A stretch of 64,000 nucleotides of DNA, from positions 124,001 through 188,000 of the IMG/VR virus record IMGVR_UViG_3300028864_000016; one strand, given 5' to 3'. The first letter of the stretch is position 1. Each line of letters begins with the position of its first letter. A program made the position numbers and the translations under genes. This document shows, one piece after another, positions 175 through 48,100 of the stretch. Under the pieces are notes generated by a model. The model was not told the origin of the DNA. It ran no database searches and worked only from the letters and a program-made list of their open reading frames with translations.

Positions 175-684
175 TTATTTTGTTCCAGAACTTCCAAATC
201 CCTTTTCATTTCTTTCACTTTCATCTAGTTCATCTACAACAATTACTTCATCAGTTGATATATAACCTATAACCATTTGTGCTAACTTTGTTTTAGCAGG
301 GATGTCAACTTCATAATCTTCTTGATTATAGACTATGATTCCTATATCTCCTCTATAATTGGAATCTAAAGTTCCTAATTGTACTCTTAAATATGGTGAG
401 CATTCTGTATAAGTAGGTGGCATTTCAGTAGGAGGATACATAGTACCAAAACATCCACTACATCCTTTTAATGTAATCCCACTTCTAGGTCTTATAGTTG
501 CTTCTTGATTAGTTTCTAATTGTACTGATATTCCTGTAGGTATTACAATTGTTTGATTGGGTTGTATTGTCGCTTCATTTAAGGTAAATAAATCAAAACC
601 AGCATCGCCTACTTTACCTTTGCATGGAATTATTGCATTTTCATTTAATTTTTTAAATTTTATCATTATATATCTCTCCTTCAA
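175..684 (-). CDS. dut: Trimeric dUTPase with an insertion between motifs II and III
   Basis: Motifs GDAGFDL, IRPRSG, GTLDSNYRG, KLAQMV, RNEKGFGSSG. Confidence 0.95.
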   Translation of the reverse strand: MKERYIMIKFKKLNENAIIPCKGKVGDAGFDLFTLNEATIQPNQTIVIPTGISVQLETNQEATIRPRSGITLKGCSGCFGTMYPPTEMPPTYTECSPYLRVQLGTLDSNYRGDIGIIVYNQEDYEVDIPAKTKLAQMVIGYISTDEVIVVDELDESERNEKGFGSSGTK

Positions 685-1218: not shown

Positions 1219-1297
1219 TAAACTACCTCCTTTAACTTGGTATAAAATATCTGTTTTAATAACTCTGTAAGTGTCTTATATCCTTATTCTTAAATTA

Positions 1298-1939
1298 CTA
1301 TTTCTTGATATAATATAGCAATAATCCACCTAATACATTAGATATTGTTACTATCACTAATGATATAATTACATTTATAATATTTAAATTCATTCCACTA
1401 CAAAATCCTAAAGTATAATAAGTCATATCTGCAATACTGTGATTAAATCCACATATTACAAACACAGTGATAAAGAATCCACTTATTAAATGATTACTAT
1501 ACATTTTGTAATTAGCTACTGCACAACATACAAGAAAATTACATACAATACCACCAATGATTAATTGTATTGGATTAAGTGCTAATTTAGTATTTACTAT
1601 TTGTTCTACATTTGGATGTAATACTTGAAATAATGCTATAGTCGTTATTACTGATCCTATTAAATTTCCAATCCAAGTTTTAGTTAATGTTTTAATATAT
1701 TCTTTAATTGATATATTACTTTTTGAAAAATATTGTTGTGTATATGTATCTGTTTTTAAACTTAATACTTGTCCAGTAAATAAATCGAATCCAAAAATCA
1801 TAACTAAACTTAAACCTAAATAGAACATAATACTTGCTATAAATGGACTATTTGTCTTTTGTAATGTTATTAAGTAAGCAAATGTACCTAATGATATAGA
1901 AACACCTGCCATTATAGAATTTTTATACTTACTTATCAT
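1298..1939 (-). CDS. Formate/nitrite transporter (FNT, FocA-like) family channel
   Basis: Six hydrophobic segments; DLFTG, WIGNLIG, GIVCNFLVC, GFNHSIADM (conserved His), NVLGG FNT signatures. Confidence 0.9.
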   Translation of the reverse strand: MISKYKNSIMAGVSISLGTFAYLITLQKTNSPFIASIMFYLGLSLVMIFGFDLFTGQVLSLKTDTYTQQYFSKSNISIKEYIKTLTKTWIGNLIGSVITTIALFQVLHPNVEQIVNTKLALNPIQLIIGGIVCNFLVCCAVANYKMYSNHLISGFFITVFVICGFNHSIADMTYYTLGFCSGMNLNIINVIISLVIVTISNVLGGLLLYYIKK

Positions 1940-2426
1940 ATATAACTACTTCACCTTTCTTTAATGATTTTTGAACATCAATTATTCTTTGATTATAACT
2001 ACCTCGATATTTTAATTTTAAATCTTTTTGTTCTAACTCAAATTGACCATCTACTAGAACATCTATATATTTTAATATTTCTAATTTATCATCTTTAATT
2101 ATCAGATTCTCAAATAAACATCCTGTCCATGTCCAAATAGTAACAGTTGTTTCCGATTTAATTCTTTTTACTAAATTTAATATCACTCTACTATCTTGAT
2201 GCATGATTTCTCCACCTAATAAATTAGCATGCTTAATTTGTTTATGTTGTAAGTATCCTATAAACTTGTCTTCTATTTGTTTAGTCCAATCATACCCATA
2301 ATTAAAATCTTGAGCAATTTCATTAAAACAACCATTGCACTTAAAATTACAACCTGAAACAAATAACGTACTTCCTATTTGAGGAGAATTAGCAACATCA
2401 AATTTTTTTATCTCTGCATATTTCAA
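1929..2426 (-). CDS. nrdG: Anaerobic RNR activase (radical SAM)
   Basis: SGCNFKCNGC CxxxCxxC motif, LLGGE, DVLVDG, YRGSYNQR; adjacent to nrdD. Confidence 0.95.
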   Translation of the reverse strand: MKYAEIKKFDVANSPQIGSTLFVSGCNFKCNGCFNEIAQDFNYGYDWTKQIEDKFIGYLQHKQIKHANLLGGEIMHQDSRVILNLVKRIKSETTVTIWTWTGCLFENLIIKDDKLEILKYIDVLVDGQFELEQKDLKLKYRGSYNQRIIDVQKSLKKGEVVIYDK

Positions 2427-2445
2427 AATCTAAACCTCCTTTGAA

Positions 2446-2463
2446 GGGAGAAATACATCTCCC
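2446..2463 (-). terminator. GC-rich hairpin between nrdD and nrdG (weak terminator or mRNA stabiliser)
   Basis: GGGAGA-6nt-TCTCCC inverted repeat, poor U-tract. Confidence 0.4.
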
Positions 2464-2468
2464 CAATA

Positions 2469-4598
2469 TTATAGATGAATAACTCTTTCTTTAATTTCTT
2501 GTGTACGTCCTTTTGACCATAAGTTAGTACCTATATATCCACACGTTCTTCGCATTACTTGAAGTTCTGTTTCATCATCATTACCACAATTAGGACAATA
2601 CCATTTAAAGTTTTCATCATTTTTCATTTCACCTTTATATCCACATTTATAGCAAACATCTGGTTTGGTATTTATTTCAGCGTATTGAACATTATGATAC
2701 ATGAAATTAATTATTTGCTCAATTGCTTCTATATTTTTTGTCATATCTGGAACTTCTATATAGCTTATACATCCTCCAGAACTTATTGCATGAAACTGAG
2801 ATTCAAATTTTAACTTAGCAAATGCGTCTATTTCTTCTTTTACATTTACATGATAACTATTTGTATAATATAATTTATCAGTTATATTATTAATCTCTCC
2901 AAACTTTTGTTTATCTAACCTGCAAAATCTATAAACTGTATTTTCCGCTGGACTTCCATACAATCCAAAACCTATTCCAGTTTCTTTCTTCCAATCGTCA
3001 CATGCCTTTCTCATTCTTAGCATAATTTCTCTTGCTAGTTTTTCACCTTCTTCAGTAGTATGACTTACTCCTAGCATTGCATAAACCATTTCATATAAAC
3101 CTATATATCCTAATGATATAGTTGAATAACCATTATGTAATAACTTGTCTATCTTTTCACCTTTGTCCAATCTTGCTAATGCCCCATGTTGCCATAATAT
3201 AGGTGCTACATCTGATAAAGTTCCTTCTAATAACTCATGTCTAACCATTAATGCTTCCTTACATAATTGTAATCTCTCATCAAATATTCTCCACATTAAA
3301 TCAATATCTTTATGTGCTAATATTCCTATCCTTGATAAATTTAATGAAATAACGCCTTGATTAAATCTGCCATACCATTTGTAATTGCCATTTTCATCTT
3401 TCCATGGACTTAAATGCGATCTACAACCCATTGGTGGGAATGTATTTCCTTCATAATTTTGTCTTAATATTTTAGCTGATTGATAATCTGGAACTAATCT
3501 TTTAGCGTTACATTTTGCACAAAGCTTAGTTATATAATCATATTTACCACCTTCTAGACAATTATGAGTATCAAGTAAATAAACTAATTTAGGAAAAGCT
3601 TCACCTATTTCTTGCCCTTTATAGTTTTTCATACCTTCTAATCTTTGTTTAATCATTTCTTCACAAATCATAGCTTGTTCTTCTTCAAATTCAGAGCCTT
3701 CTTCAATTTCTAGATATATTGTAGCAAAAGGCGATTGCCCATTAGTTCCTGAGATTGTAGATAGTTGATATCTAATTGTTTGAACTCCACTTTTTAGTTC
3801 TTTTAATTTTATATCTTTTGCTAATATAATAGCAGTTTCTTCATTGAAATTCATATTTTTATAATGTTCCAATGCTTTATCATAAGCAACTCTTAAATAA
3901 GGGGCTAAATGTCTAATGGTTATGCTTTGCCCTCCATATTGACTGCTGGATACTTGTGCCATAATTTGAGTTGCTACAGTACATGCAGTTTCAAAAGATT
4001 TAGGGGTTTCAACTAATTTTTCATTGATAACTGTTCCATTAGTAAACATATCTTCTAAATTAATTAGGTCACAATTATGCATAGATTGCAATGTATAGTC
4101 CATATCATGCCAATGAATATCTCCACTTACATGAGCTTGAACTATTCTAGTTGGAATAAGTTTTCTTTTAGATAGATCCTTAGATACTTCTCCAGCTATT
4201 AAATCTCTTTGCGTTGAAACAACATATCCATTTTTATTTGAATTTTCTCTCATGACATCTTCATTTGTTGTATCTAATAATTTCAAAATACTTTCATCCG
4301 TTGTATTTATTTCTCTTTTGTATTCTTGTATAACTCTATATCCTTCATAAGATTTAGCAGTTTGAACATGTCCTAATTTAATTAATGTGTCATAAATATA
4401 ATCTTCAATCATATGTACTGTTGGAATTTTATCATCCATAGAAAATACTTTTTTACATTCATATGCTATTTTATCTGCAATAGATTCTTCTACTATTCCA
4501 CTGCCATATTTCATTGCTTTCAAAATAGCATTTCTAATCCTTTGTGTATCAAAGTCTACCTTTGTTCCGTCACGCTTTATAATTTGCATTAAATCCAC
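2469..4598 (-). CDS. nrdD: Class III anaerobic ribonucleotide reductase with N-terminal ATP cone
   Basis: IIKRDG ATP cone, HWHD, HNC, MGCRS, CxxC..CxxC Zn site, RRTCGYIG glycyl-radical loop. Confidence 0.97.
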   Translation of the reverse strand: MDLMQIIKRDGTKVDFDTQRIRNAILKAMKYGSGIVEESIADKIAYECKKVFSMDDKIPTVHMIEDYIYDTLIKLGHVQTAKSYEGYRVIQEYKREINTTDESILKLLDTTNEDVMRENSNKNGYVVSTQRDLIAGEVSKDLSKRKLIPTRIVQAHVSGDIHWHDMDYTLQSMHNCDLINLEDMFTNGTVINEKLVETPKSFETACTVATQIMAQVSSSQYGGQSITIRHLAPYLRVAYDKALEHYKNMNFNEETAIILAKDIKLKELKSGVQTIRYQLSTISGTNGQSPFATIYLEIEEGSEFEEEQAMICEEMIKQRLEGMKNYKGQEIGEAFPKLVYLLDTHNCLEGGKYDYITKLCAKCNAKRLVPDYQSAKILRQNYEGNTFPPMGCRSHLSPWKDENGNYKWYGRFNQGVISLNLSRIGILAHKDIDLMWRIFDERLQLCKEALMVRHELLEGTLSDVAPILWQHGALARLDKGEKIDKLLHNGYSTISLGYIGLYEMVYAMLGVSHTTEEGEKLAREIMLRMRKACDDWKKETGIGFGLYGSPAENTVYRFCRLDKQKFGEINNITDKLYYTNSYHVNVKEEIDAFAKLKFESQFHAISSGGCISYIEVPDMTKNIEAIEQIINFMYHNVQYAEINTKPDVCYKCGYKGEMKNDENFKWYCPNCGNDDETELQVMRRTCGYIGTNLWSKGRTQEIKERVIHL

Positions 4599-8086: not shown

Positions 8087-8983
8087 TTATATACTCATTA
8101 ATTCTGTAAATTCTATAACTTTTCCAGTTTCATTTGCTATTTCAACTATATTGGTAGCAAGTTCTTGAACTGCTGAATTTGTTTGTTCCATGCATGCACT
8201 CATTGAAACACATCCATCATTTATACCTTCTATACGAGATATTCTAAGTACATTGCTTTCTTTTAATTTTTTACTATTTTCTTTCCCCGTTTCAGTTTTT
8301 TCAAGAATAACGTTAGCCATAACTTGTAATTCTTTTATAATTTGACTTATCATTATACTAGAATCTTTAGTTTCTTGTGCGAGTTTTTTAACTTCATTTG
8401 CAACAACTCCAAATCCTTTACCTGCTTCACCTGCTCTTGCAGATTCAATATTGGCATTTAATGATAATAAATTGGTTTGATTAGCTATGTCTTTAATCAC
8501 ATCTGTTATTTTATCAATGTCTTTCATTTTAACATGTAATTCATTTGCATTATTATTGATATCAGCTATAGCATCGTGAAATATTGCCATAACTCCACTA
8601 TTGTCTTTAGCACTTTCATAAGCAAGATTAACTTCTGAAGAAATATTAACTATATTCGCTGTTACTTCTTCTACCGTTGCACTTATTTCCTCCACTGAAC
8701 CTGCTTGACCTGTTATATTATTACTAATTATAGACATCTCTTTTAATAATTTTTCATTTGATTCGGATGTTGACTTCTTATATTCTTCGAATGTTTTATC
8801 TTTTTCAATTAATGTTATATGTAGTTCTTCATTTTGTAATTCCAGTTCTTTGATTTTACTATCTTTCTTTAATTCAAGTTCTTCTAGTTTATCATTCGTT
8901 TCCTTTTCTAAAGTTATTCTTAGTTCATTTAACCCTTTTTCATTTTTAAATAATTTTTTCATCATATTAATACACTCCCTCAT
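8087..8983 (-). CDS. Cytoplasmic methyl-accepting chemotaxis protein (signalling domain only)
   Basis: [37 protein letters not shown] hairpin tip; EEISATVEE and EQTNSAVQE methylation-like helices; no TM segment. Confidence 0.93.
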
Positions 8984-9677: not shown

Positions 9678-10004
9678 TTATTCATATTCTTTATATGTAT
9701 TAATAAATAAGGTATTTAAATTATGTATTTCATCTTCATCTATAGATATATTATTATTTATATATCCTAATTTGTTTTTGTCTATTACTTGATAAACTAT
9801 AATACTATTATTATTCACAGCGGTTTCATCATATACTTCATCTGAAATAATAGATTTAAATATTAATTTGTTATTTTGTTTTTCTAATACGCAATATCTT
9901 AATTTACTAGAATTAGTTCCTTTTTCTAATATACAATAGATACTATCTTTTGAAGCGGTTATTTCTTGGATACTCATCTGCTTTCCATGATATATCACAT
10001 GCAT
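9678..10004 (-). CDS. Hypothetical protein
   Basis: 108-aa ORF overlapping the sigma-factor stop. Confidence 0.6.
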   Translation of the reverse strand: MHVIYHGKQMSIQEITASKDSIYCILEKGTNSSKLRYCVLEKQNNKLIFKSIISDEVYDETAVNNNSIIVYQVIDKNKLGYINNNISIDEDEIHNLNTLFINTYKEYE

Positions 10005-10594
10005 AATGATACCTCATCTTTTAGTTCTATTTGTAACTTCTTTTTAATTTGTTTTATTCTATAGCGAATGCATTCTCTAGTTTTATCATACATCCTTCCT
10101 ATTTCAGCGTAATTTAATCCTTTCATAAAGTGTAAATTAATCATATCTTGTTCTTGACTAGAAAAAGTTTTTAACACTTCTGATATTTTTTGATTAGTAA
10201 TATTTAATAATGCAGATTCTTCACAATTACAATTATCATCTTTAATTGTTTCAATCATTTGTAAGTCATCAGATTCATCAACTATACTATATATACTGCA
10301 AGTTTCAATATCTCCACCACGTTTTTGTCGTTTATCTCTTTTATATGTATCAAATATAATGTCTTTAATTACTTTTTTCGCATAAGGTACGAATGACATA
10401 TTCTGTGAAATGTCGTAATAATTATAAGCTTTAATTAACCCAATATATGCTATTTGAATCAAATCATCTTTTTCATAATGTGAACACCATTTAATTACAT
10501 CTTTTGTATGTGTCATTTTATCAAATTCTTTTACTACTTCATCTAATGTCATTTCTTTATTTATACCGTTTTTACATCTTATTAATTTTTTCAT
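9995..10594 (-). CDS. Sigma-70 family sigma factor (sporulation/SigH-like, regions 2 and 4)
   Basis: DDLIQIAYIGLIKAYNYYD..SFVPYA region 2; LNYAEIGRMYDKTRECIRYR region 4 HTH. Confidence 0.9.
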   Translation of the reverse strand: MKKLIRCKNGINKEMTLDEVVKEFDKMTHTKDVIKWCSHYEKDDLIQIAYIGLIKAYNYYDISQNMSFVPYAKKVIKDIIFDTYKRDKRQKRGGDIETCSIYSIVDESDDLQMIETIKDDNCNCEESALLNITNQKISEVLKTFSSQEQDMINLHFMKGLNYAEIGRMYDKTRECIRYRIKQIKKKLQIELKDEVSLCM

Positions 10595-10632
10595 TATTTA
10601 CTCTCCTTTTTTTATTTTAATTTGTTAATGTA

Positions 10633-10661
10633 ATAGTACTATATAATGGATATGTTGTCAA
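10633..10661 (-). promoter_or_regulatory. Sigma-A type promoter for the sigma-MCP-3D operon
   Basis: TTGACA-17nt-TACTAT, flanked on both sides by the repeated AYAAATTAA box. Confidence 0.85.
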
Positions 10662-10683
10662 TGTTTATTTATATTAATTTATT

Positions 10684-10950
10684 TTATTCTTCGTTATAAT
10701 CATATCTAACTTTATCAATTTCATAAACATCTTTATATTCAAATCTATATAAGTTATCATTCTGTATTAATTCTTCAAAATCAATAATTTCAATTCCATC
10801 TTGGTCAACTTTTTCTTTTAAAATCTCAAGAATTACATCTTCTAATAACTCTTTGTCCTCAATAATGCCTTCTTTAATTGTTATAATTGTATCTCCATTT
10901 AATTGAATATCTCCAATCCAGTATATAAACCTTACTATGTAATCAATCAT
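10684..10950 (-). CDS. Acidic hypothetical protein
   Basis: 88-aa ORF. Confidence 0.55.
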   Translation of the reverse strand: MIDYIVRFIYWIGDIQLNGDTIITIKEGIIEDKELLEDVILEILKEKVDQDGIEIIDFEELIQNDNLYRFEYKDVYEIDKVRYDYNEE

Positions 10951-11144
10951 TATTTATCATCTCCTTCTTTTGAATTACTTTTTATGTTTTCATAAATTGA
11001 TATACTTAAGAATAAAGCAACTATACTATCTATTCCGTTTGGATTTGCATTTCCATATGAGATCAACTCTGCAAATTGCCAACATATTGCTATTATCACA
11101 TATAAAAATATAAGACTTATTAAATAATCTAATCTTTTCCTCAT
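10950..11144 (-). CDS. Small two-TM membrane protein
   Basis: Two hydrophobic helices. Confidence 0.55.
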   Translation of the reverse strand: MRKRLDYLISLIFLYVIIAICWQFAELISYGNANPNGIDSIVALFLSISIYENIKSNSKEGDDK

Positions 11145-11243
11145 TATTATCTCTCCTTATATCTATTAATTTATTAAAACCTTATAAAATTTCTCCTTTA
11201 TTTAGATTTTGGATAATTTAAATTCATTTCACATTCAACTCCC

Positions 11244-46792: not shown

Positions 46793-46960
46793 CGTTACCT
46801 ATGATTTATATAACTTCCTAAATCATTGTTTAATTCCTTATTCAACGTGTCCTATTTTGCATTATCACTAATACTACTTTAGTTTGATATGACACTCCAA
46901 AGGCTTAACTTCGGGCATAACGAACCCTACACCTCAGCATTATCGTTTTAGTGTGATTTA
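46772..46960 (-). ncRNA. TnpB omegaRNA (right-end RNA) scaffold plus predicted guide
   Basis: GTGTAGGGTTCGTTATGCCCGAAGTTAAGCCTTTGGAGTG..GGACACGTTGAATAAGGAA..GTAACGG, resembling clostridial IS607/IStron right ends; guide would start at 46791. Confidence 0.65.
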
Positions 46961-48100
46961 TGCTGAATATCTACTTAGATTTATACTTGCATTATAATCT
47001 CTATCTATAACACAACCACATTCCTCACAGATATAAACTCTATCAGATAGCTTTAGTTCCTTTTTTATATGACCACACCCACTACAAGTCTTTGATGATG
47101 GATACCATTTATCAGCTTCAACAAATTCAATCCCATTAAACTCGCATTTATACTGCATTTGTCTTTTAAATTCATATAAACATTGTTCTGCAATAGCTTT
47201 TGATAAATGTTTATTTTTCATCATACCTTTAATGTCAAGTGTTTCCATAACAACTCTTGATGGTTTGGTTTTCACTATCATATTTGTTGCTTGGTGTAAA
47301 TGATTATTTCTTATATTTGTTAATTTTCTATAGACTAATTTTATTTGTTTTTCCAACTTAATCATATTATTAGTCTTATTTAATTGGTAACAATTTTCAC
47401 TCTCTTTCTTAATTTTATTATTTTCATATTTTCGATTAACTTGTTTTTGTAATCTTTTTAATTTCTTTTCTGTTTTCTTAACTTTTTTAGTTTTATTAAT
47501 ATTTTTGAATGTCATTCCATTGGAGCATATTGCTAAATCTTTGATTCCAAGGTCTATTCCTATTGATAAATCTTTATTCAATCCAACCTTAGTTTCATTG
47601 TGTTCAAACCCAAATGTTAGATACCAATATTTTCCGTCAAAATAACACCTTGGATTATTATATTTGGGCAAATTGGGAATGTTATAATTAGTTTTATACT
47701 TAACTTTTCCTATTTTTTCTAAATTTACTTTGTTATCTTGAAATTTTATAGCATCATATCTAACATAAAATGATTGTTTTGAGTTTTTCTTAGTTTTAAA
47801 TTTAGGATAATTAGATAATCCTTTGAAAAAATTTTTATATGCCGTATTTAAATCTTCAAATGCTTGTGATGTGACTTGAGCACTCACTTCTTTTATCCAT
47901 TGATAATTTATATCTTTCTTTAAAACATTATTAAATTCTTTTCTGATTATAGTTTTTGATGGATTTTGTCCTTGTTTGTAAGCATCTTCCCATTTTGCTC
48001 TTCCCCAGTTATAAGTAAATCTTGCTATACCACATGATTTAAACATTAATGTTTCTTGTTCTTTTGTTGGTTTTAATCTTACTTTTATTGACTTTATCAT
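46958..48100 (-). CDS. tnpB: TnpB RNA-guided endonuclease (IS200/605/607 family), catalytic triad intact
   Basis: KVRLKPTKEQ HTH, GIDLG (D), VMETL (E), YPSSKTCSGCG, CEECG, DRDYNAS (D). Confidence 0.96.
   Translation of the reverse strand: MIKSIKVRLKPTKEQETLMFKSCGIARFTYNWGRAKWEDAYKQGQNPSKTIIRKEFNNVLKKDINYQWIKEVSAQVTSQAFEDLNTAYKNFFKGLSNYPKFKTKKNSKQSFYVRYDAIKFQDNKVNLEKIGKVKYKTNYNIPNLPKYNNPRCYFDGKYWYLTFGFEHNETKVGLNKDLSIGIDLGIKDLAICSNGMTFKNINKTKKVKKTEKKLKRLQKQVNRKYENNKIKKESENCYQLNKTNNMIKLEKQIKLVYRKLTNIRNNHLHQATNMIVKTKPSRVVMETLDIKGMMKNKHLSKAIAEQCLYEFKRQMQYKCEFNGIEFVEADKWYPSSKTCSGCGHIKKELKLSDRVYICEECGCVIDRDYNASINLSRYSA

What the first reader, a model, noticed from the sequence alone, without database searches (positions are those of the whole stretch)
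1298..4598. Phage-encoded formate channel coupled to a formate-type anaerobic ribonucleotide reductase
Seen: nrdD-nrdG-FNT are contiguous, and the FNT start overlaps the nrdG stop by 11 nt. The FNT is compact (213 aa) but keeps DLFTG and the GFNH His. NrdD has the MGCR motif and the HNC second cysteine. Known: NrdD enzymes of this type (T4/E. coli-like) use formate as reductant, and FocA-type channels move formate. Inference: the phage supplies or retains its own reductant by controlling formate flux during infection. I do not know of an FNT described as part of a phage dNTP operon.
Basis: partly seen in the sequence, partly recalled or inferred. Interest (0 to 1): 0.85.

Follow-up and report, generated by a model that had tools for sequence, protein, structure and literature searches.

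The report
Phage anion channel tied to anaerobic RNR
A 218-kb phage of low-GC anaerobes carries a small formate/nitrite-family membrane channel in one operon with its formate-type anaerobic ribonucleotide reductase, most likely to bring in the formate that DNA-precursor synthesis consumes, though the channel's substrate is untested.

Summary
On the minus strand, nrdD (2469-4598), nrdG (1929-2426) and a 213-aa FNT channel gene (1298-1939) are contiguous, and the FNT start overlaps the nrdG stop by 11 nt.

The FNT models as a complete protomer (pLDDT 95.6). It keeps every pore residue essential in E. coli FocA (T55, H167, K118, N134) and is under purifying selection (dN/dS 0.07-0.32).

NrdD is formate-type by sequence: Met390-Gly-Cys392, Cys176, and Asn413 where thioredoxin-type enzymes have a third Cys.

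All 12 distinct FNT genes found in phage context beside an RNR lie within about 1.5 kb downstream of nrdG or nrdD. This holds across two NrdDG types only about 28% identical, intein, intron-like and homing-endonuclease invasions, and a 40%-GC phage whose FNT is 34% identical. None of 34 evaluable other FNT loci are linked, including chromosomal Clostridium homologues.

The reverse does not hold: only 2 of about 50 NrdD phages carry an FNT.

The channel is not FocA-type. It lacks the N-terminal gating domain, fails the FocA, NirC and generic FNT NCBIfam cut-offs, and its nearest solved structure is the hydrosulfide channel HSC. Formate is inferred from gene association only.

Phage FNT genes were already known (cyanophage focA-nirA). 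This is a new variant of a known kind.

The parts
2469..4598 (-). nrdD: class III (anaerobic) ribonucleoside-triphosphate reductase, formate-type by sequence. It has an ATP-cone, Cys176 on the first beta-strand, Met390-Gly-Cys392 on the finger loop, Asn413 at the 'third Cys' position, the glycyl-radical motif RRTCGY, and a C-terminal 4-Cys zinc ribbon.
   Evidence: NF006732 844.6 bits against cut-off 657; 9D3X E=4e-135; T4 1H78 E=9e-124; diagnostic position taken from PMC11226230.
1929..2426 (-). nrdG: radical-SAM activase of NrdD, with the CX3CX2C motif (CNFKCNGC).
   Evidence: TIGR02491 142.4 bits against cut-off 126.1; phrog_626.
1298..1939 (-). Compact FNT-family channel, 213 aa. Central constriction F39/F160/H167/A170; cytoplasmic slit L43/L53/T55/V137; also K118, N134 and N201. 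There is no N-terminal cytoplasmic domain. A 12-residue loop (about residues 60-71) is modelled as a beta-hairpin.
   Evidence: pLDDT 95.6; TM-score normalised to the query 0.79-0.85 against HSC, FocA, NirC, PfFNT and LciA.
1929..1939 (-). 11-nt overlap between the nrdG stop and the FNT start (ATGATAAGTAA). This layout is typical of translational coupling.
   Evidence: Overlaps or short gaps at the same junction are seen in L001, L004, L011, L034, L097 and L098.
1951..1956 (-). AGGTGA Shine-Dalgarno sequence for the FNT gene, 11 nt upstream of the ATG and inside the 3' end of nrdG.
   Evidence: read directly from the sequence.
1290..2091 (-). Block with 82.6% nucleotide identity to the L001/L017-type phage. 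It covers the last ~160 nt of nrdG plus the whole FNT. The rest of nrdG and all of nrdD are unrelated at DNA level to that phage. It marks one recombination boundary inside the operon.
1832..4553 (-). Block with 75% nucleotide identity to L011. It covers nrdD, nrdG and the first ~100 nt of the FNT. It is the second parent of the mosaic.
175..684 (-). dUTPase, the next recognisable gene downstream. It belongs to the same dNTP-metabolism cluster and recurs near the FNT in L004, L005, L006, L096, L097 and L098.

Best explanation
The three genes form one operon of a 218-kb phage of low-GC anaerobes, probably Clostridia. NrdG activates NrdD, and NrdD reduces NTPs to dNTPs, oxidising one formate to CO2 per turnover. 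The co-translated compact FNT inserts into the host membrane as an ungated pore of the formate/nitrite family. It equilibrates formate (as formate plus H+, i.e. formic acid) between the medium and the cytoplasm. As NrdD draws the internal pool down, net flux runs inward, so phage DNA synthesis is not limited to what the host's own pyruvate formate-lyase makes. Shown: the gene identities, operon layout, an intact pore, purifying selection, conserved linkage, and formate-type NrdD residues. Inferred: that formate is the substrate, that flux is inward, and that formate supply limits phage yield.
For: (1) Operon layout: 11-nt stop/start overlap with an internal SD. The single terminator-like hit lies in the nrdD-nrdG gap and is no more than chance gives.
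(2) Functional channel: AF2 pLDDT 95.6 and pTM 0.90; full FNT fold, TM-score normalised to the query 0.79-0.85. All residues shown essential for formate translocation in FocA are invariant across 33 family members: T91/H209/K156/N172 correspond to T55/H167/K118/N134. The FFHA and LLTV constrictions match FocA. dN/dS is 0.07-0.32.
(3) Linkage: 12 of 12 distinct phage-context FNTs lie just downstream of nrdG or nrdD, against 0 of 34 evaluable other FNT loci.
(4) Persistence of the linkage: it survives a change of NrdDG type (FNT 84% identical while NrdD is 28% and NrdG 35%; conversely FNT 45% with NrdD 79%). Crossovers fall inside the operon. A NUMOD1 homing-endonuclease gene is inserted between nrdG and the FNT in L006. 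Inteins, an intron-like insert and ORF insertions occur in nrdD. The arrangement also holds in a 40%-GC phage whose FNT is only 34% identical and falls outside the main clade (L034).
(5) Every linked NrdD is formate-type: M-G-C on the thiyl loop and Asn in GRxN where thioredoxin-type enzymes have Cys (criterion from PMC11226230).
(6) Precedent: FNT genes sit beside the enzyme that makes or uses their substrate, as in focA-pflB, nirBD-nirC and the viral focA-nirA pair.
(7) My estimate, not a tool result: 218 kb is 4.4e5 nt per genome. A burst of 20-100 therefore needs about 1e7-4e7 formate if dNTPs are made de novo. One mM in 1 fL is only 6e5 molecules.
Against: No direct evidence identifies the substrate. 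By sequence the channel is closer to HSC (E=3e-14) and NirC (8e-12) than to E. coli FocA (9e-5), and it branches nearer NirC. It fails the generic FNT, FocA and NirC NCBIfam cut-offs. Its pore signature is shared by formate, nitrite and hydrosulfide channels. The linked phages share other genes (orf202, MCP, orf63), so much of the synteny is inherited and is not independent evidence. Only 3 of 54 viral NrdD loci (2 phages) carry an FNT, so the channel is dispensable for most formate-type phage RNRs. Chromosomal Clostridium homologues at 45-46% identity have no nrdDG or formate context. In L096 the FNT follows dUTPase rather than nrdG. The membrane potential would favour anion efflux through a purely channel-like pore, so inward flux needs proton coupling, which is assumed by analogy.
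Confidence: 0.55

Rival explanations
1. The channel carries another small anion such as hydrosulfide, nitrite, lactate/acetate or bicarbonate. Its place after nrdG is inherited gene order in one phage group and has no functional tie to the reductase.
For: The nearest solved structure is the C. difficile hydrosulfide channel, followed by NirC and the bicarbonate channel LciA. The FFHA/LLTV pore is shared by those subfamilies. The linked phages share flanking genes, so the synteny is partly vertical. In L098/L099 a PLP enzyme with weak similarity to the D-cysteine desulfhydrase family, which releases H2S, follows the FNT. Other phage FNTs (L012/L013, Phass-1) are not near nrdD.
Against: No sulfite-reductase, nitrite-reductase or carbonic-anhydrase gene lies near any linked FNT. 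The adjacency survived replacement of nrdDG, a homing-endonuclease insertion and divergence to 34% identity, while the genes on either side of the triplet changed. The start/stop overlap with the upstream gene is kept in most lineages. The one small-molecule co-substrate of the neighbouring enzyme is formate.
Confidence: 0.25
2. The FNT works mainly outward. It vents formate or other fermentation acids to control cytoplasmic pH or acid stress in the infected cell, and helps replication only indirectly.
For: FocA exports formate during fermentation, and HSC and PfFNT are thought to act mainly as exporters (PMC5572259). The membrane potential favours anion exit. FocA K156, the counterpart of window K118, is needed for efflux (PMC9380403).
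Against: Exporting the reductant of the enzyme encoded immediately upstream would work against that enzyme. The pore His is retained, and replacing it in FocA (H209N) gives an efflux-only channel (abstracts of PMC8914244 and PMC12559229). A dedicated exporter would have no reason to keep it invariant. Nothing ties an acid-venting role to nrdDG specifically.
Confidence: 0.1
3. The protein is used as a membrane-perturbing factor, for example holin-like, superinfection exclusion or host shut-off, and not as a metabolite channel.
For: It is a small, very hydrophobic phage membrane protein. PHROGs files the nearest phage family as 'unknown function'.
Against: The transport-critical residues are invariant and dN/dS is low. 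The gene sits in the replication and nucleotide-metabolism module, with DNA polymerase, primase, helicase and dUTPase, not in a lysis cassette. Close chromosomal homologues lie among housekeeping genes.
Confidence: 0.05

Closest known systems
[quoted passage not shown]
   Same: An FNT channel is encoded in one operon with a glycyl-radical enzyme whose reaction involves formate, together with that enzyme's radical-SAM activase. The pore residues are identical (F75/F202/H209/A212, L79/L89/T91/V175, K156, N172, N262).
   Different: Here the enzyme consumes formate instead of making it. The gene order is enzyme-activase-channel. The channel lacks the N-terminal helix through which FocA binds PflB, is 72 residues shorter, and scores far below the FocA model cut-offs. 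None of the 14 PflB residues cross-linked to FocA is conserved in E. coli NrdD (PMC5600444).
Cyanophage focA-nirA auxiliary metabolic genes (Gazitua et al. 2021, PMC8115048)
   Same: A virus carries an FNT channel next to the enzyme that uses the transported anion. It is read as securing substrate supply during infection.
   Different: That FNT is 86% identical to a Prochlorococcus nitrite transporter and has a long charged C-terminus. The partner is nitrite reductase, and the role is nitrogen assimilation, not DNA-precursor synthesis.
Phage-encoded reductants for phage RNRs (T4 NrdC thioredoxin, NrdH-type redoxins with class I RNR). This comparison is from my own knowledge.
   Same: The phage brings its own means of delivering reducing equivalents to its own ribonucleotide reductase.
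   Different: Those are soluble redox proteins for class I enzymes. Here the reductant is a small metabolite, and the phage would supply a membrane pore for it.
C. difficile hydrosulfide channel HSC (PDB 3TDO) and Salmonella NirC (4FC4)
   Same: These are the nearest solved relatives by sequence (E=3e-14 and 8e-12) and by fold (TM-score normalised to the query 0.83-0.85). The HSC residues mutated in the PDB entries (L82, T84, F194) and the pore His have conserved counterparts (L53, T55, F160, H167).
   Different: Identity is 24-27%. HSC and NirC are about 45-55 residues longer, with N- and C-terminal extensions. Salmonella nirC lies next to the nitrite reductase genes nirBD; from my own knowledge, HSC lies next to sulfite reductase genes. 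Neither reductase is present here.
Chromosomal compact FNTs of Clostridium (L014 Clostridium sp. MSJ-8; L020-L023)
   Same: 203 aa, 45-46% identical, with the same truncated architecture. They nest inside the phage clade in the tree, so they are the likely source, or a recipient, of the phage gene.
   Different: They lie among housekeeping genes (secA/hpf/recD2; VTC/S49 peptidase) with no nrdDG nearby. Their function is unknown.

Membership tests
FNT superfamily (Pfam PF01226) | Profile score above the curated cut-off | tested here: met
   119.1 bits against 34.6; residues 7-208 cover profile positions 24-233 of 240.
FNT superfamily (Pfam PF01226) | Six-TM aquaporin-like fold with broken TM2 (omega-loop) and TM5 (S-loop) | tested here: met
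   AF2 model pLDDT 95.6. Foldseek TM-score normalised to the query is 0.79-0.85 against HSC, FocA, NirC, PfFNT and LciA. Helix breaks fall at residues 50-53 and 164-167.
FNT superfamily (Pfam PF01226) | Pore Thr (FocA T91) and His (H209), plus K156, N172 and N262 | tested here: met
   T55, H167, K118, N134 and N201. All are invariant in the 33-sequence family alignment. Their roles are described in PMC9380403.
FNT superfamily (Pfam PF01226) | Central constriction FFHA and cytoplasmic slit LLTV (Mukherjee et al. 2017) | tested here: met
   F39/F160/H167/A170 and L43/L53/T55/V137. This excludes the YfdC-type pattern (YIHV) and the NirC-alpha pattern (FFHV, F/Y79).
FNT superfamily (Pfam PF01226) | Homopentamer in the membrane | not tested
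   Only a monomer was modelled.
FocA (formate channel) subfamily | Score above the FocA equivalog cut-offs (TIGR04060, NF008069) | tested here: not met
   66.7 bits against 290.1, and 33.2 against 440. E. coli FocA is the most distant reference in the tree.
FocA (formate channel) subfamily | Cytoplasmic N-terminal helix or domain that binds PflB/TdcE and gates the pore | tested here: not met
   The protein starts at about residue 30-38 of FocA/HSC, so there is no room for the domain.
FocA (formate channel) subfamily | I/L-Y-L-R/K motif closing TM6 (PMC5572259) | tested here: inconclusive
   The C-terminus is ...LLLYYIKK. Relatives end YFMKR, YYSKR or VSITK. These are aromatic-plus-basic endings, but they do not align with Y278-L-R280.
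FocA (formate channel) subfamily | Formate translocation demonstrated | not testable with these tools
   Needs transport or reporter assays.
NirC (nitrite channel) | Score above the NirC equivalog cut-off, and nirBD or nirA gene context | tested here: not met
   57.2 bits against 293. No nitrite reductase gene lies near any linked FNT.
HSC (hydrosulfide channel) | Association with asrABC sulfite reductase, and HS- conductance | tested here: not met
   HSC is the nearest PDB relative, but no asr genes appear in any context examined. Conductance cannot be tested here.
NrdD, formate-dependent type (NrdD1 of Wei et al. 2014) | Class III RNR profile above the cut-off, with the glycyl-radical domain | tested here: met
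   NF006732 844.6 bits against 657; PF13597 599 bits; Gly_radical 71.7 bits; RRTCGY motif.
NrdD, formate-dependent type (NrdD1 of Wei et al. 2014) | Thiyl-radical Cys on the finger loop and a second Cys on beta-strand 1 | tested here: met
   C392 in PMGCRS and C176 in MHNCD, aligned to the 9D3X sequence.
NrdD, formate-dependent type (NrdD1 of Wei et al. 2014) | No third Cys on beta-strand 6 (Asn instead) and no active-site Glu | tested here: met
   Asn413 in GRFN, 21 residues after C392. The criterion is PcNrdD Asn435, 19 residues after Cys416 (PMC11226230). From my own knowledge T4 Asn311 lies 21 residues after Cys290. L001, L004, L005, L011 and L034 show the same. The Glu position was not mapped separately.
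NrdD, formate-dependent type (NrdD1 of Wei et al. 2014) | Met two residues before the thiyl Cys (E. coli M382, partner of the thiosulfuranyl radical) | tested here: met
   M390. M-G-C is kept in all six linked NrdD lineages examined. The role of the Met is cited from my own knowledge and from PMC4390871.
NrdD, formate-dependent type (NrdD1 of Wei et al. 2014) | Formate actually used as the reductant | not testable with these tools
   Needs an enzyme assay.
NrdG activase | Equivalog score above the cut-off and a CX3CX2C cluster motif | tested here: met
   TIGR02491 142.4 bits against 126.1; the motif is CNFKCNGC.

The most novel reading that the evidence does not exclude
The compact FNTs lacking an N-terminal domain are a distinct, uncharacterised subfamily of ungated formate/H+ importers. 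Phages have recruited them so that a formate-dependent RNR can run on environmental formate made by neighbouring fermenters. On this reading the infected cell becomes a net formate sink, phage yield in anoxic habitats depends on community formate, and the same assignment would give a first function to the chromosomal Clostridium homologues. A stronger form, not excluded but unsupported, is direct docking of NrdD on the channel, as PflB docks on FocA.
Probability: 0.3. Interest if true: 0.75.

Novelty: new variant of a known kind. Interest (0 to 1): 0.6.

Why it matters
Phages are known to carry their own ribonucleotide reductases and, for the aerobic classes, their own thioredoxin-like reductants. 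For the anaerobic class the reductant is a metabolite, and nothing was known about how phages secure it. A conserved nrdD-nrdG-FNT operon suggests that formate supply can limit viral DNA synthesis in anoxic habitats, and that some large phages solve this with a membrane pore. That would link phage productivity to the formate economy of fermenting communities. The finding also offers a concrete, testable substrate guess for a widespread but uncharacterised group of about 200-aa FNT proteins. It provides a natural minimal FNT, without the regulatory N-terminus, for mechanistic work.

Tried and rejected
1. Assigning the substrate from similarity failed. PDB sequence ranking (HSC > NirC > LciA > FocA), fold search (all FNTs at TM-score 0.79-0.85) and pore signatures (identical in FocA and NirC) do not discriminate.
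2. The C-terminal Y-L-R/K 'formate' motif was inconclusive.
3. Rfam found no group I intron in the ~210-nt insert that splits L004 nrdD, so 'intron' remains a guess.
4. The idea that other phage FNTs also pair with a reductase was rejected. The Phass-1 FNT lies among hypothetical genes. The L013/L157 FNT is followed by an intein-bearing KaiC/RecA-like ATPase, not an RNR.
5. The E. coli 'phage' records with focA are host ycaO-focA-pflB DNA inside prophage-derived records.
6. No PFL, formate dehydrogenase or second RNR gene turned up in the rest of the 64-kb window.
7. The promoter and terminator scans were uninformative: 42 promoter-like sites against 48.5 expected.
8. Wei et al. 2014 (PMC4246965, PMC4073831) are not held in the library, so the NrdD1/2/3 criteria were taken second-hand from PMC4493059, PMC4390871 and PMC11226230.
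9. A NrdD-FNT physical complex was considered and left unsupported. The FocA N-terminal helix is absent, and the PflB contact residues are not conserved in NrdD.


Full report
**What is in the window.**
The window is 25% GC and every ORF of 120 aa or more is on the minus strand. PHROGs identifies a phage DNA polymerase, RecJ, primase, DnaB helicase and several methyltransferases. The same sequence occurs in IMG/VR as a 218,173-bp contig, so this is a jumbo phage. It is absent from the GenBank phage collection. Only nrdD has a DNA-level relative there, at 76% identity, in a Clostridioides phage. At the finding's coordinates the three ORFs are as described: nrdD 2469-4598, nrdG 1929-2426 and FNT 1298-1939.
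- The FNT ATG (1939-1937) and the nrdG TAA (1931-1929) lie in ATGATAAGTAA, which gives an 11-nt overlap.
- An AGGTGA Shine-Dalgarno sequence lies 11 nt upstream of the ATG.
- Family assignments are secure for NrdD, NrdG and the FNT superfamily.

**The channel.**
The 213-aa protein passes Pfam's FNT model (119 bits against a cut-off of 34.6). It falls far below NCBIfam's cut-offs for generic FNT, FocA and NirC. An exhaustive profile search shows about five 50%-identity clusters of close relatives, within a much larger population of 190-225 aa FNTs.
- A 33-sequence alignment (A1) gave an AlphaFold model with pLDDT 95.6 and pTM 0.90.
- The model superposes on all solved FNTs at TM-scores (normalised to the query) of 0.79-0.85.
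- Aligned with E. coli FocA, the central constriction is F39/F160/H167/A170 and the cytoplasmic slit is L43/L53/T55/V137, with K118, N134 and N201 in place.
- These are the positions defined by Mukherjee et al. (PMC5525234) and shown by Kammel et al. to be essential for translocation or structure (PMC9380403).
- They are invariant or nearly so in the family, and dN/dS between phage copies is 0.07-0.32.

So this is a working pore, not a remnant. What it lacks is the cytoplasmic N-terminal segment, about 26-37 residues depending on the reference, and the C-terminal tail. In FocA the N-terminal helix mediates gating by PflB. Sequence ranking against solved structures is HSC, then NirC, then LciA, then the FocA proteins. 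In the tree NirC is a closer reference than FocA. Salmonella NirC has the same residues at all the pore positions examined. Neither sequence nor fold therefore tells the substrate.

**The reductase.**
NrdD aligns full-length with 9D3X (E=4e-135) and with the T4 enzyme (E=9e-124). It has the first-strand Cys176 and the finger-loop M390-G-C392. Asn413 sits where thioredoxin-type class III enzymes carry the third Cys. The criterion is stated for PcNrdD: 'no third cysteine on the sixth beta-strand, its place is taken by Asn435' (PMC11226230). By this sequence criterion the enzyme is formate-type.

**Is the linkage conserved?**
The database search returned 38 compact FNTs at 50-100% identity, all from metagenomes. 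Wherever upstream DNA exists, nrdG or nrdD lies directly upstream.

| Locus | Arrangement | Notes |
|---|---|---|
| L001-3 / L017 | nrdD-nrdG-FNT | FNT 84% identical; intein in nrdD |
| L004 | nrdD-nrdG-FNT | FNT 61%; nrdD split by a ~210-nt insert |
| L005 | nrdD/nrdG fusion-FNT | FNT 50%; intein in nrdD |
| L006 | nrdG-[NUMOD1 gene]-FNT | homing-endonuclease-like gene inserted |
| L011 / L024 | nrdD-nrdG-FNT | FNT 45%, NrdD 79% |
| L018, L019 | nrdG-FNT | short contigs |
| L097 | nrdD-nrdG-FNT | nrdD split by a 242-aa ORF |
| L098 / L099 | nrdD-nrdG-FNT | a PLP enzyme follows |
| L096 | nrdD-dCMP deaminase-dUTPase-FNT | no nrdG in between |
| L034 / L158 | dUTPase-nrdD-nrdG-FNT | 40% GC; FNT 34%; outside the main clade |

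With the window itself, that is 12 distinct FNT sequences, and all 12 are linked. By contrast, 64 other distinct FNT loci showed no nrdD or nrdG, 34 of them with at least 2 kb of upstream sequence. These include chromosomal Clostridium genes of 203 aa at 45-46% identity that sit among secA, hpf, recD2, VTC and S49-peptidase genes. They also include other viral FNTs. All linked NrdDs keep M-G-C and the strand-6 Asn.

**How independent is this evidence?**
Not fully. The AT-rich phages share flanking genes (orf202, the MCP-domain gene, orf63), so they form one broad group and much of the synteny is inherited. Three observations go beyond simple inheritance.
1. The FNT and NrdDG histories disagree. 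Window against L001 gives FNT 84% but NrdD 28% and NrdG 35%. Window against L011 gives FNT 45% but NrdD 79% and NrdG 69%.
   - DNA similarity to L001 covers only window 2091-1290, which is the 3' end of nrdG plus the FNT.
   - DNA similarity to L011 covers 4553-1832, which is nrdD, nrdG and the 5' end of the FNT.
   - The window operon is therefore a recombinant with crossovers inside the operon, so both parents already had the nrdG-FNT junction.
2. The triplet persists while the genes on either side differ, and despite mobile-element insertions.
3. L034 is a phage of a different GC class, with a deeply diverged FNT and the same order.

The converse is weak. Of 54 IMG/VR loci encoding relatives of this NrdD, only 3 (two phages) have an FNT. 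The FNT is therefore an optional accessory of nrdDG, not a standard part of it.

**Mechanism.**
The best reading is that the FNT supplies NrdD's co-substrate.
- FNT genes classically lie next to the enzyme that makes or uses their anion, as in focA-pflB, nirBD-nirC and the viral focA-nirA pair. The only small-anion co-substrate of NrdD is formate.
- My back-of-envelope estimate is that a 218-kb genome needs 4.4e5 dNTPs. A burst of 20-100 would then consume 1e7-4e7 formate, against about 6e5 molecules per mM per fL. Flux, not pool size, would matter.
- A pore that lets formic acid (formate plus H+) equilibrate with the medium would let consumption pull formate in.
- The invariant His fits proton-coupled uptake, because FocA H209N is efflux-only (PMC8914244 and PMC12559229).

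I put this explanation at 0.55. The main rival, at 0.25, is that the channel carries another anion and the position is historical. The efflux and membrane-perturbation readings are less likely.

**Comparison with what is known, and novelty.**
The closest analogue is focA-pflB-pflA: an FNT, a glycyl-radical enzyme and its activase. Here the enzyme is a formate consumer, and the channel is stripped of the PflB-binding N-terminus. Phage FNT genes are already on record: the cyanophage focA-nirA pair (PMC8115048), one BFVD entry annotated as a formate/nitrite transporter, and a PHROG of unknown function. I found no paper pairing an FNT with nrdDG in phages or bacteria, though these searches cover only the open-access library. 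Conceptually the finding extends the known habit of phages to carry reductant systems for their RNRs. I rate it a new variant of a known kind, with interest 0.6.

Noticed in passing
L001:2261-5503; L005:2328-5951: The NrdD of these related phages carries a LAGLIDADG intein inserted exactly before the thiyl-radical cysteine (extein ...PMG | C RAF...). The catalytic Cys therefore doubles as the intein's +1 nucleophile.
   Followed up: partly
L004:4284-4523: At the very same codon boundary (…SPMG / CRAFLSPW…), L004 nrdD is interrupted by about 210-240 nt of non-coding DNA instead of an intein. This looks like a small intron at an intein homing site, but no Rfam family matched.
   Followed up: partly
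L005:2328-5951: A single 1207-aa ORF without internal stops contains NrdD (with intein; glycyl-radical motif RVCGY at residue 1030) followed in frame by NrdG (CX3CX2C at residue 1094). This appears to be a natural reductase-activase fusion.
   Followed up: partly
L034:2880-6480; L097:73-3502: nrdD is broken into 2-4 ORFs, with an HNH_3+NUMOD1 endonuclease gene (L034:5146-5934) or an unknown 242-aa ORF (L097:1310-2038) in between. nrdD seems to be a hotspot for mobile elements in this phage group.
   Followed up: partly
window 8087-8983 (-): A 298-aa protein with a methyl-accepting chemotaxis protein signalling domain (PF00015, 107 bits) is encoded by the phage. A 44%-identical homologue occurs in L004.
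   Followed up: no
window 46958-48100 (-): A 380-aa ORF matches the PHROG 'transposase' family phrog_506 (E=4e-118) inside the phage genome. I read it as TnpB/IS605-like, but that subtype was not checked against Pfam.
   Followed up: no
window 9995-10594 (-): A phage-encoded ECF-type sigma factor, with sigma-70 regions 2 and 4.
   Followed up: no
L001:7399-8118; L096:2415-2780: Counter-defence genes lie just downstream of the FNT in relatives: an anti-Pycsar Apyc1 homologue and an Acb2/Tad1-hairpin protein.
   Followed up: no
L034:9701-9910: A full-length HEARO RNA (Rfam RF02033, 130.9 bits) lies directly upstream of an RRXRR/HNH ORF (9938-11170). This is the arrangement typical of IscB-like elements, here in a phage contig.
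   Followed up: no
L098:2517-3404; L099:3644-4531: A 295-aa PLP-dependent enzyme with weak similarity to the D-cysteine desulfhydrase/ACC deaminase family immediately follows the FNT. A desulfhydrase would yield pyruvate plus H2S, which bears on both the formate and the hydrosulfide readings.
   Followed up: partly
window 1290-2091 and 1832-4553: The window's nrdD-nrdG-FNT operon is a mosaic of two phage lineages, with crossover points inside the 3' end of nrdG and the 5' end of the FNT.
   Followed up: yes
L157:7002-9500: In a 192-kb viral contig of 48% GC, an unrelated 271-aa FNT is followed by an 832-aa protein that has a KaiC/RecA-like P-loop interrupted by a PI-SceI-type intein.
   Followed up: partly
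window 1727-1762 (FNT residues ~60-71): The window FNT and its closest relatives carry a 12-residue insertion (LKTDTYTQQYFS) after TM2b, modelled as a beta-hairpin. The other half of the compact family lacks it.
   Followed up: no
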